Shown here piece after piece: positions 36,350-37,404 of a stretch of 64,000 bases of DNA. Under the pieces are notes generated by a model, which did no database searches, was not told the origin of the DNA, and saw only the letters and a program-made list of their open reading frames with translations. The position numbers and the translations under genes are program-made. Each line of letters starts with the position of its first letter. Position 1 is the stretch's first letter. Where the stretch lies: the IMG/VR virus record IMGVR_UViG_3300027749_002876, positions 310,001 through 374,000 of that record. One strand, 5' to 3'.

Positions 36350-36586
36350 TTAGAAGAATGGTAGTTGTGATTTCTTAGTAACTTCCATATTACTATCAAT
36401 AATTTTCTTAATTTCTTCACGTTCCTCAGTGGACATGTTTAATACATCTTCATATGAAACACCACCACGCATGTACCAACTCATACTAAGAGCACTTTTC
36501 TTAATATCGGTACACTCTTTTTCCATATTATCTATCAGCTTCTTTACGCCTTCGTGGTCAAGGCGCAGAAGCCTTATCCGAAAAAA
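36350..36586 (-). CDS. Tail assembly chaperone second module (gp51/T-like), -1 frame of the gp26-like gene; 58 aa from ATG 36526
   Basis: Not in the ORF track. Frame open from the slippery site to TAA at 36350: FFRIRLLRLDHEGVKKLIDNMEKECTDIKKSALSMSWYMRGGVSYEDVLNMSTEEREEIKKIIDSNMEVTKKSQLPFF. Confidence 0.8.
   Translation of the reverse strand, partial: FFRIRLLRLDHEGVKKLIDNMEKECTDIKKSALSMSWYMRGGVSYEDVLNMSTEEREEIKKIIDSNMEVTKKSQLPFF
36538..36586 (-). other. Programmed -1 ribosomal frameshift signal
   Basis: U_UUU_UUC heptamer (36580-36586) in the correct frame, 7-nt spacer, then stem GCUUCU-GCGCCUU/AAGGCGU-AA-AGAAGC (36538-36572). Confidence 0.75.
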
Positions 36587-37404
36587 TCAGATGTGTTTAA
36601 AGTGAAAGGTTGTTCGTAGTCATTTTGACAATGAATGCATTTAATTTTCAGTGGTTTAATTTCTGTTTGTGCTTTTAAATTTGCATTATAATCTCTAATA
36701 GCAATGTAAGTATCTCTATCACAATTCTGTAGGTAATCCAGTATATATTCTCTTTCCTCTACAAAAGCACTAGGTGTTTTTACATGAGTAATAGCTTGTG
36801 ATATAATACGCATTGTAACATCAGTAATAAATTTCAATGCCTGTTGAGTTTTACTTATCCTAACAGTTTCATCTTCTTCTTTGTCTACCTGAAGAAACAT
36901 TCGTTGTGCTTCTATTTGTCCAGTACCTGCATCATTCATTTCTTTATATGTCAGTGGTCTAAATTTAATTGACAGGTCATTTAAAACTAATTCTTTATCA
37001 TAGTCAGCAGATTTAAGTTGACTTAGTATACCTATCAGATTAACAGCATATTCTGCAATTTCTTTACAACTTGGGCATTCTGATGCTACACTCATGTCAT
37101 TACCGCCCGCTGCCGAACGTATTGCTATTAATATAGCATCTAAGTCAATGCTATTAATTGCCCATGGGTCTTTGATATCAGGAATACAGCTTTTTATAAT
37201 GTCTACCATTGCGGTTCCGTTATATAGCGCATCTGGTGTTTTTGAGCTAATTTCATCGATAGCAGTCATTGGATAAACTGCTAGTTCTCCAGACTCTGGT
37301 ATAGTTAATACAGAAGGTGAATACATTTTACCACCGCTAGGTAATTTCAAATAAATTGAAGGTCTACGAAAATATTGCTTTAGTGGGTTGTTTTGAATGG
37401 TCAT
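36574..37404 (-). CDS. gp26: Baseplate hub assembly/tail assembly chaperone, gp26-like, 276 aa
   Basis: NPLKQYFRRPSIYLKLPSGG, VYPMTA.DE, D.DAILIAIRSAAGG and two CxxC motifs (CPSC, CIHC). Confidence 0.85.
   Translation of the reverse strand: MTIQNNPLKQYFRRPSIYLKLPSGGKMYSPSVLTIPESGELAVYPMTAIDEISSKTPDALYNGTAMVDIIKSCIPDIKDPWAINSIDLDAILIAIRSAAGGNDMSVASECPSCKEIAEYAVNLIGILSQLKSADYDKELVLNDLSIKFRPLTYKEMNDAGTGQIEAQRMFLQVDKEEDETVRISKTQQALKFITDVTMRIISQAITHVKTPSAFVEEREYILDYLQNCDRDTYIAIRDYNANLKAQTEIKPLKIKCIHCQNDYEQPFTLNTSDFFG

What the first reader, a model, noticed from the sequence alone, without database searches (positions are those of the whole stretch)
36350..36600. Canonical -1 programmed frameshift joining the gp26-like gene to its downstream ORF (G/GT-type chaperone pair in a T4-like phage)
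Seen on the minus strand: ...TCT GAT TTT TTC GGA TAA. The heptamer U_UUU_UUC (36580-36586) is followed after 7 nt by a 13-bp bulged stem (36538-36572). The -1 frame is closed by TGA immediately before the heptamer and then stays open for 78 codons (FFRIRLLRLDHEGVKKLIDNMEKEC...LPFF). Established: lambda G/GT-type tail chaperones next to tape-measure genes use X_XXY_YYZ -1 frameshifts, whereas T4 gp26 and gp51 are separate genes. Inference: this phage makes a 276-aa product and a ~350-aa fusion, supporting a link between gp26/gp51 and tail assembly chaperones.
Basis: partly seen in the sequence, partly recalled or inferred. Interest (0 to 1): 0.72.

Follow-up and report, generated by a model that had tools for sequence, protein, structure and literature searches.

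The report
Conserved frameshift in gp26-like gene
A giant freshwater phage makes a short and a long version of its T4 gp26/gp51-like baseplate-hub assembly protein by a conserved -1 ribosomal frameshift. This suggests why phage T4 carries two separate genes (26 and 51) for the same job.

Summary
The minus-strand gene 37404..36574 (276 aa, Pfam T4_baseplate) ends GAT TTT TTC GGA TAA. An in-frame U_UUU_UUC lies at 36586..36580, followed by a 6-nt spacer, a 14-bp bulged hairpin, and a 78-codon -1 ORF.

- **Heptamer:** it is invariant in 79 metagenomic relatives (48-100% identity) and present in eight cultured jumbo phages (RaK2, 121Q, Munch, PA5oct, XacN1, RsoM2USA, Atu_ph07, Phosso). None of those records annotates a frameshift.
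- **-1 ORF:** it shows a coding signature from the slip site onwards and has no conserved start codon.
- **Hairpin:** it shows compensatory changes.
- **Sister lineages:** they encode the same extension fused in frame (319-351 aa). In the three contigs examined, a separate short paralogue sits next to the fused gene.
- **T4:** gp51 equals gp26-like domain plus a 48-aa tail. That tail aligns with the extension (hhalign E 1.6e-5) and has the same helix order in models.

Best reading: a canonical -1 frameshift makes a 276-aa and a 351-aa hub/tape-measure assembly protein. This works like lambda G/GT but is not homologous to it. No protein-level evidence exists. I found no paper describing this. 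I rate it a new variant of a known kind.

The parts
36574..37404 (-). gp26/gp51-like gene, 0-frame product 276 aa (short form)
   Evidence: ORF. Pfam PF12322 T4_baseplate at 49.9 bits against a cutoff of 24.5. phrog_150 baseplate hub.
36580..36586 (-). slippery heptamer U_UUU_UUC (codons F274 and F275, preceded by the last base of D273)
   Evidence: Invariant in 62 distinct relatives, while neighbouring third codon positions vary at 0.3-0.5. Present in 8 cultured jumbo phages.
36574..36579 (-). 6-nt spacer GGAUAA containing the 0-frame stop codon
   Evidence: In relatives the 0-frame codon here is a variable GNN, while the -1 frame reads an invariant Arg.
36537..36573 (-). stimulatory hairpin: 14 bp, 2-nt bulge, 7-nt loop
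   Evidence: Across 56 relatives 84.8% of cells are paired, against 36-53% when the partner column is slid. There are 41 double-change cells against 13.4 in shuffles (0 of 500 shuffles reach it).
36350..36586 (-). -1 frame extension: 78 codons including the two shared Phe, adding 76 residues (long form 351 aa). Coordinates include the stop at 36350..36352.
   Evidence: It matches the C-terminal 76 residues of natural 319-351 aa fused homologues. It is modelled as a four-helix tail.
37475..40648 (+). divergently transcribed tape-measure-like gene (1057 aa), the presumed client
   Evidence: phrog_167 and phrog_794 tape measure, E 1.6e-8 and 1.4e-6. A large gene sits in the same divergent position in RaK2 (annotated there as similar to a tail tape measure protein), RsoM2USA, Phosso, PA5oct, 121Q and Munch.

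Best explanation
Mechanism. Ribosomes translating the gp26/gp51-like gene reach U_UUU_UUC one codon before the stop, while the hairpin 6 nt downstream sits at the mRNA entrance. In a fraction of ribosomes the two Phe-tRNAs slip back one base. Translation then continues in the -1 frame (CGG = Arg onwards) for 76 more residues. The phage therefore makes a 276-aa short form and a 351-aa long form. Both share the T4_baseplate domain, and the long form carries an extra C-terminal helical tail.

Status of that step. It is inferred from strong comparative evidence and has not been observed as protein.

Function. This part is a further inference. The two forms act together, in a ratio fixed by frameshift efficiency, as assembly proteins for the central hub and tape measure. 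This is the role assigned in T4 to gp26 (short) and gp51 (long). It works like lambda G/GT but without homology to it. My confidence is about 0.9 for the frameshift and about 0.55 for the chaperone function.
For: 1. All the elements are present in the window.
2. The heptamer is in frame in all 79 complete IMG/VR relatives and in RaK2, 121Q, Munch, PA5oct, XacN1, RsoM2USA, Atu_ph07 and Phosso, which share only 24-34% protein identity. The three synonymous sites in GAT TTT TTC never vary in 62 distinct sequences.
3. The -1 ORF is exactly 78 codons in the close relatives and is conserved from its first residues (FFR.RLL). Its first ATG falls anywhere from codon 3 to codon 38, and Met21 is present in only 42 of 62. 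Codons 3-20 show the same third-position bias and synonymous fraction (0.36) as codons 21-78 (0.42), against 0.05-0.17 in the other frames.
4. Directly after the heptamer, the 0-frame residue varies (G/E/D/A/V) while the -1 Arg is invariant.
5. The hairpin shows compensatory changes. Strong hairpins also follow the heptamer in Atu_ph07, Phosso and RsoM2USA.
6. About 20 clusters of 319-351 aa proteins carry the extension fused in frame. Their junction falls in the same alignment column as the slip site.
7. In three such contigs a second, short PF12322 paralogue lies immediately upstream, so both forms are kept when there is no frameshift.
8. T4 gp26 is the domain alone. gp51 is the domain plus a conserved 48-aa tail. 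The extension profile matches that tail with hhalign E 1.6e-5, and the full-length profiles align collinearly through the junction with E 4.1e-5. The helix order is the same in the two AlphaFold2 models.
9. The gene is conserved next to a divergently transcribed large gene in the tape-measure position.
10. T4 gp26 and gp51 are listed as hub assembly chaperones, and gp51 is absent from virions (PMC3004832).
Against: - No protein, ribosome-profiling or reporter data exist for any member.
- RNAalifold returned no consensus structure, and the RaK2 hairpin is weak (z = -0.6).
- In Atu_ph07, Phosso and about a dozen relatives an ATG overlaps the stop (ATGA). A free extension peptide could therefore also be made there.
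- Runs of 6-9 T could also allow transcriptional slippage.
- On function: there is no similarity to known tail assembly chaperones in Pfam or in solved structures. The gene is not between the tube and tape-measure genes. The complex prediction with tape-measure residues 1-700 gave no answer. The gp51-tail homology rests on 38 aligned columns at 79% probability.
Confidence: 0.85

Rival explanations
1. The downstream ORF is a separate small gene. It would be translated on its own from the ATG at 36526, or by termination-reinitiation at the stop, giving a 58-75 aa protein and no fusion.
For: Gene callers and GenBank records annotate it this way (121Q gp595, Phosso 319, Munch 275, Atu_ph07 gp687). 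Many database entries are 58-75 aa proteins. Some relatives have an ATGA start/stop overlap.
Against: There is no conserved start: the first ATG ranges from codon 3 to codon 38, which lies inside the most conserved motif. Coding-type conservation starts at the slip site. The heptamer and hairpin are conserved. In-frame fused homologues join at the same column. There is no clear Shine-Dalgarno sequence before 36526.
Confidence: 0.05
2. The same long product is made, but by RNA polymerase slippage on the T run (one extra U in part of the transcripts) rather than by ribosomal slippage.
For: The site is a homopolymer: T6 here, T7 in XacN1 and T9 in RsoM2USA. Transcriptional slippage is a known alternative route for such fusions (review PMC5009743).
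Against: Six T is short for efficient polymerase slippage (from general knowledge, not tested here). The register X_XXY_YYZ, the preceding T and the final C or T are all conserved. A covarying hairpin at the canonical 6-nt distance is what ribosomal frameshifting needs. Only assembled contigs of public runs were available, so RNA indels could not be checked.
Confidence: 0.07
3. The frameshift is real, but the two forms are structural subunits of the baseplate hub with alternative C-termini. They would not be chaperones acting like G/GT.
For: Database names say 'baseplate hub subunit'. Some T4 genetic work places gp26 in the hub (PMC3004832). There is no similarity to known tail assembly chaperones.
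Against: gp26 and gp51 are listed as hub assembly chaperones, and gp51 is required for assembly but not present in the particle. In the PA5oct record the neighbouring large protein carries an ESI-MS/MS note and the gp26-like protein does not. That is weak evidence.
Confidence: 0.25
4. The overlap is an assembly error or a decaying gene broken by a 1-nt indel in a homopolymer.
For: Homopolymer runs are error-prone in some sequencing chemistries.
Against: The same arrangement is seen in more than 60 distinct metagenomic sequences and 8 independently sequenced isolates. Purifying selection acts on both frames.
Confidence: 0.01

Closest known systems
Lambda G/GT tail assembly chaperones, and their counterparts in other long-tailed phages (Xu, Hendrix & Duda 2004; summarised in PMC5009743)
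   Same: Two products share an N-terminal part, and the longer one is made by a -1 frameshift near the end of the short ORF. The gene lies beside the tape-measure gene. Presumed role in tail assembly at a fixed ratio.
   Different: There is no detectable sequence or fold similarity, and the protein is about twice as large. The gene is divergent from the tape-measure gene rather than between the tube and tape-measure genes. Binding to the tape measure or tube has not been shown (one search gave no answer).
Phage T4 gp26 and gp51 (hub assembly chaperones; Pfam PF12322)
   Same: True homologues of the 276-aa protein. T4 also has a short form (gp26, domain only) and a long form (gp51, domain plus tail). 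The gp51 tail aligns with the frameshift extension and shows the same helix order.
   Different: T4 uses two genes and has no slippery site: its FF is coded TTC TTT. The T4 pair appears to come from its own duplication (tree). The gp51 tail is 48 aa against 76 aa here.
Tandem short + long PF12322 gene pairs in uncultured phages (contigs L103, L104, L105)
   Same: Same domain and same extension. Both forms are present.
   Different: The extension is fused in frame in a second gene. The short paralogue has no open -1 frame, although the heptamer survives as a relic in L103 and L104.
Canonical bacterial -1 frameshift cassettes such as E. coli dnaX (heptamer, spacer, stem-loop)
   Same: Same architecture: an X_XXY_YYZ heptamer, a 6-nt spacer and a stable downstream hairpin.
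   Different: The heptamer is U_UUU_UUC rather than A_AAA_AAG. No upstream Shine-Dalgarno-like stimulator was looked for or seen. The shift lengthens the product instead of shortening it.

Membership tests
-1 programmed ribosomal frameshift cassette | X_XXY_YYZ heptamer in the 0-frame register | tested here: met
   T_TTT_TTC at 36586..36580. Invariant in relatives.
-1 programmed ribosomal frameshift cassette | Stimulatory RNA structure 5-9 nt downstream, maintained by selection | tested here: met
   14-bp hairpin after 6 nt. 84.8% of cells paired against 36-53% in slid controls, with compensatory changes at 4 or more pairs. RNAalifold alone found nothing.
-1 programmed ribosomal frameshift cassette | -1 ORF under protein-coding selection from the slip site, with no start of its own | tested here: met
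   In-frame fused homologues.
-1 programmed ribosomal frameshift cassette | Trans-frame protein detected, and its efficiency measured | not testable with these tools
   Only assembled contigs of metagenome runs hold this DNA.
T4 gp26/gp51 family (Pfam PF12322 T4_baseplate) | Profile match above the curated threshold over the whole domain | tested here: met
   49.9 bits against 24.5, residues 19-275 on profile positions 6-218 of 219. Nearest predicted folds are T4-like hub assembly proteins, E 3e-14.
T4 gp51-type long form (domain plus C-terminal tail; Pfam PF28602 in public annotation) | Homology of the extension to the gp51 tail | tested here: inconclusive
   hhalign Prob 79%, E 1.6e-5 over 38 columns. 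Collinear full-length alignment with E 4.1e-5. Same helix order in models. PF28602 itself could not be run.
Lambda G/GT-type tail assembly chaperones | Short and long products related by a -1 frameshift | tested here: met
   See the frameshift cassette rows above.
Lambda G/GT-type tail assembly chaperones | Sequence or fold similarity to known chaperone families | tested here: not met
   No chaperone family in Pfam or PHROGs. Foldseek against PDB gave a best E of 0.14. VIA wide search gave a best Z of 5.9, on the helical tail only.
Lambda G/GT-type tail assembly chaperones | Gene located between the tail tube gene and the tape-measure gene, on the same strand | tested here: not met
   The gene is divergent from the tape-measure gene, and no tube gene is adjacent.
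Lambda G/GT-type tail assembly chaperones | Binds the tape measure; the long form recruits tube or hub; absent from virions | not testable with these tools
   The complex prediction gave no answer. There is no proteome for this phage.

The most novel reading that the evidence does not exclude
The PF12322 (gp26/gp51) proteins would be the T4-type and jumbo-myophage counterpart of the G/GT tail assembly chaperones. A short form plus a long form would be the conserved requirement, met in three ways: a -1 frameshift in the RaK2/121Q/PA5oct/Atu_ph07-type jumbo phages, tandem paralogues in other lineages, and genes 26 and 51 in T4. On this reading the long-unexplained essential, non-structural gp51 plays the 'GT' role, and the apparent lack of a chaperone frameshift in T4-like phages is explained by gene duplication replacing recoding.
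Probability: 0.4. Interest if true: 0.85.

Novelty: new variant of a known kind. Interest (0 to 1): 0.75.

Why it matters
Frameshift-encoded short and long chaperone pairs are a hallmark of long-tailed phages. [quoted passage not shown]

A conserved frameshift in their jumbo-phage homologues gives a concrete, testable model for gp51 as the 'long form'. The model is backed by natural fused forms, by tandem gene pairs, and by a gp51 tail that aligns with the extension.

The finding also corrects the annotation of a whole group of cultured jumbo phages (RaK2, 121Q, PBECO4-like, Munch, PA5oct, XacN1, RsoM2USA, Atu_ph07, Phosso). It does the same for thousands of metagenomic relatives (6316 homologues), where the long product is missing and the extension is called a small hypothetical protein or not called at all.

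Finally, it provides a clean natural series for studying how recoding and gene duplication replace each other: frameshift, relic heptamer, in-frame fusion, duplicated genes.

Tried and rejected
- **DNA-level search of the phage collection:** no match. Protein-level searches were needed instead.
- **Family searches on the 77-aa extension alone:** Pfam gave only sub-threshold chance hits. PHROGs gave a weak hit to an unnamed family, phrog_18291, at E 2.7e-4.
- **RNAalifold on 56 aligned sequences:** empty structure. The stem was therefore tested by explicit pair counting.
- **hhalign against single T4 sequences or a 9-member gp51 alignment:** only weak results, E 0.02 to 0.007, and N-terminal-only matches. 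A 32-member gp51 profile was needed.
- **The search for homologous proteins with the window protein:** returned only near relatives of 276 aa. With the fused form P0176 it found almost nothing.
- **Foldseek/PDB, VIA wide and ESM Atlas searches:** no solved or named relative beyond the T4_baseplate family.
- **Complex prediction of the short form with tape-measure residues 1-700:** 'no answer'. This is not evidence either way.
- **PF28602:** not in the local Pfam copy.
- **Public sequencing runs:** they hold this DNA only as assembled contigs, and the RNA runs hold 4-5% of the words. Read laying was therefore not used, and transcriptional slippage could not be tested.
- **Upstream in-frame T_TTA_AAC (36601..36595):** considered and rejected as a second slip site. 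It is found only in this strain, and the -1 frame closes at once.
- **tRNA and Rfam scans of the window:** nothing found.

Full report
**What is in the window.**
- On the minus strand, the ORF 37404..36574 encodes a 276-aa protein ending ...NTSDFFG.
- Its last codons read GAT TTT TTC GGA TAA, so U_UUU_UUC (36586..36580) sits in the X_XXY_YYZ register one codon before the stop.
- Six nucleotides further on, a hairpin of 14 pairs begins (36573..36537), with a 2-nt bulge and a 7-nt loop. A 91-nt stretch folds at -23.9 kcal/mol, z = -3.0 against shuffles.
- The -1 frame is closed by TGA just upstream of the heptamer, then stays open for 78 codons to the stop at 36352..36350.
- Tandem slippage would give a 351-aa protein (275 + 76 residues).

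**What the gene is.**
- The 276-aa protein belongs to the T4 gp26/gp51 family (Pfam PF12322, 49.9 bits against a cutoff of 24.5; phrog_150 'baseplate hub').
- The divergently transcribed neighbour (37475..40648, 1057 aa) is tape-measure-like.
- Other genes in the window are homologues of T4-type core genes: portal, prohead protease, major head protein, gp5-, gp6- and gp25-like baseplate proteins, late sigma factor, and gp46/gp47 (the gp46/gp47 assignment rests on the annotation of the syntenic RaK2 and Atu_ph07 regions).
- The nearest cultured relatives are jumbo myophages at 24-34% identity: Atu_ph07, Phosso, PA5oct, RaK2, 121Q, XacN1 and RsoM2USA.
- The DNA comes from freshwater metagenomes, and the family is large there, with 6316 homologues.

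**Is the frameshift site conserved?**
- I fetched 80 IMG/VR loci sharing 48-100% protein identity. All 79 complete ones carry T_TTT_TTC in frame at the same place.
- Among 62 distinct sequences, the third positions of upstream codons vary at 0.3-0.5. The three synonymous sites of GAT TTT TTC never vary.
- The same in-frame heptamer occurs at the conserved FF in RaK2, Atu_ph07 and Phosso, with T_TTT_TTT in RsoM2USA. It also occurs in PA5oct, 121Q, Munch and XacN1.
- In every case a 72-84 codon -1 ORF follows.
- No record that I opened annotates a joined CDS. The extension is either a small 'hypothetical protein' or not called at all.

**Is the -1 ORF translated from the slip site?**
- In the close relatives it is always 78 codons and is conserved from its first residues (FFR.[RK]LL). 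The first ATG lies anywhere from codon 3 to codon 38, and the window's Met21 is present in only 42 of 62 sequences.
- Codons 3-20 show the same codon-position pattern and almost the same share of synonymous differences (0.36) as codons 21-78 (0.42). The two other frames give 0.05-0.17.
- Directly after the heptamer, the 0-frame codon is a variable GNN (Gly, Glu, Asp, Ala or Val). The overlapping -1 codon CGN is always Arg.
- This pattern is expected for a trans-frame protein and not for an independently initiated gene.

**Is the hairpin selected?**
- On 56 aligned sequences, 84.8% of cells form pairs, against 36-53% when the 3' partner is slid by 1-3 columns.
- There are 41 cells with changes on both sides, against 13.4 in shuffles (0 of 500 shuffles reach it).
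- Examples are C-G to U-A at three positions and A-U to G-C at a fourth.
- RNAalifold on its own returned no structure.
- Distant relatives have their own strong hairpins after the heptamer (Atu_ph07, Phosso, RsoM2USA). The RaK2 hairpin is weak.

**Natural fusions and two-gene versions.**
- A profile of the extension, searched against 1.8 billion representative proteins, found 396 hits. Most are small called ORFs.
- About 20 clusters are proteins of 319-351 aa with the extension at their C-terminus, in frame. Their junction reads .FR.K[LI] and has no heptamer.
- When these fused forms are aligned together with the short proteins and the extensions of the frameshift clade, the short C-terminus (...DFF) and the start of the extension (FFR...) meet in the same column as the junction of the fused forms.
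- In all three contigs I examined, the fused gene is immediately preceded by a second PF12322 gene of 276-297 aa, which is a separate short form.
- Two of these short paralogues still carry T_TTT_TTC or T_TTT_TTA, but the -1 frame stops after one further codon.
- Lineages without a frameshift therefore still keep both a short and a long protein.

**Link to T4.**
- In T4, gp26 (208 aa) is the PF12322 domain alone.
- gp51 (249 aa) is the domain (residues 1-201) plus a 48-aa tail that is highly conserved among T4-like phages.
- T4-like gp26 proteins end EFFELL or similar. The FF is spelled TTC TTT, so there is no slippery site.
- Single sequences gave only weak matches. A 32-member gp51 profile aligns the extension (residues 39-76) with the gp51 tail at Prob 79%, E 1.6e-5.
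- The full-length profiles align collinearly through the junction and the tail: 239 columns, E 4.1e-5.
- The AlphaFold2 model of a fused form has pLDDT 95.4 and pTM 0.90. The model of a gp51-like protein has pLDDT 92.2.
- Both models show the same order after the second beta hairpin: junction helix, second helix (30 residues in the fused form, 14 in gp51), short helix, final helix.
- A tree places T4-like gp26 and gp51 as sister clades, apart from all jumbo-type sequences. The T4 duplication therefore looks independent of the tandem pairs, with a long-branch caveat.
- I regard 'gp51 = long form, gp26 = short form' as likely but not proven.

**Function.**
- According to the T4 literature, gp26 and gp51 are hub assembly chaperones. 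gp51 is essential, of unknown function, and absent from the particle (PMC3004832).
- Lambda gpG and gpGT are made at about 30:1 by a -1 frameshift. Neither is in virions. The G part binds the tape measure and the T part binds the tube protein (PMC5009743).
- The present system shares the logic (short plus long form, recoding, next to the tape-measure gene) but not the ancestry.
- There is no Pfam or PHROG chaperone hit, no solved-structure match, and the gene order differs.
- A complex prediction with the first 700 residues of the tape measure gave no answer.
- The chaperone role is therefore an inference from homology to gp26/gp51 and from analogy to G/GT.

**Rivals.**
- Independent initiation or reinitiation is contradicted by the absence of a conserved start, by the coding signature from the slip site, and by the fused homologues. 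It may still add a free peptide in the members with an ATGA overlap.
- Transcriptional slippage on the T run cannot be excluded with the data available. It fits the conserved register and the hairpin less well.
- Sequencing error is excluded by the breadth of conservation.
- A structural rather than chaperone role remains possible.

**Novelty.**
- Six full-text searches found no description of a frameshift in gp26/gp51-like genes.
- A major recoding review does not mention one.
- In the search, the genome papers of PA5oct, Atu_ph07, CBB, XacN1 and RsoM2USA show no occurrence of 'frameshift'.
- The library does not hold everything; Xu et al. 2004, for example, could not be read. Prior mention elsewhere cannot be ruled out.
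- The mechanism is canonical. Its occurrence in this family, and what it implies for T4 gp26/gp51, appears to be new.

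Noticed in passing
window 47815..51735 (+): Four tandem ORFs of 308-335 aa with no PHROG match. Two of them (48841-49767 and 49801-50736) are 60% identical and are built of internal repeats of about 55 aa (TNLVSNTGVVATDT.GVGTAR...YGTDKAIFGYG).
   Followed up: partly
window 1466..19135 (-): A single ORF of 5889 aa next to the baseplate wedge genes. 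Not analysed.
   Followed up: no
window 46776..47756 (+): A homing-endonuclease-like ORF (phrog_314) directly downstream of the major head protein gene 45449..46651.
   Followed up: no
window 35838..36350: About 500 nt between the PDDEXK resolvase-like gene and the end of the -1 ORF, with no convincing ORF, no tRNA and no Rfam match.
   Followed up: partly
window 36595..36601 (-): A second in-frame heptamer, T_TTA_AAC, lies 15 nt upstream of the main one. It is present only in this strain (and L005/L006), and the -1 frame closes after four codons. It is probably not functional.
   Followed up: yes
L103:1274-1280 and L104:2771-2777: The short PF12322 paralogues of the two-gene lineages keep T_TTT_TTC or T_TTT_TTA at the FF motif. 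The -1 frame stops after one more codon (FFH, FFK). These look like relics of a former frameshift site. The L103 and L105 short paralogues have also lost the two CxxC motifs.
   Followed up: partly
L085 (T4) 7803..8090 (-): The T4 record annotates gene 26' as an internal start within gene 26, giving the C-terminal 95 aa. T4 gene 26 therefore also yields two products, by a different route.
   Followed up: no
proteins P0271-P0390 (gp51 family): Public precomputed annotation gives the gp51 family a second Pfam domain, PF28602, beside PF12322. It is absent from the frameshift-clade proteins and from the local Pfam copy, so its relation to the extension could not be tested directly.
   Followed up: partly
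window 37424..37437 (-): A short GC-rich hairpin followed by a T run (TGGGCAAACGCCCA TTTTT) lies in the 5' leader of the gp26-like gene, about 10 nt upstream of its AAGGA ribosome-binding site. It was the only terminator-like site in 35800..37600, and shuffled sequence gives about as many.
   Followed up: no
window 39600..39900 (+), tape-measure residues about 740-800: A serine/glycine-rich low-complexity stretch (SSGSSSGS repeats) and glycine-zipper segments inside the tape-measure-like protein.
   Followed up: no
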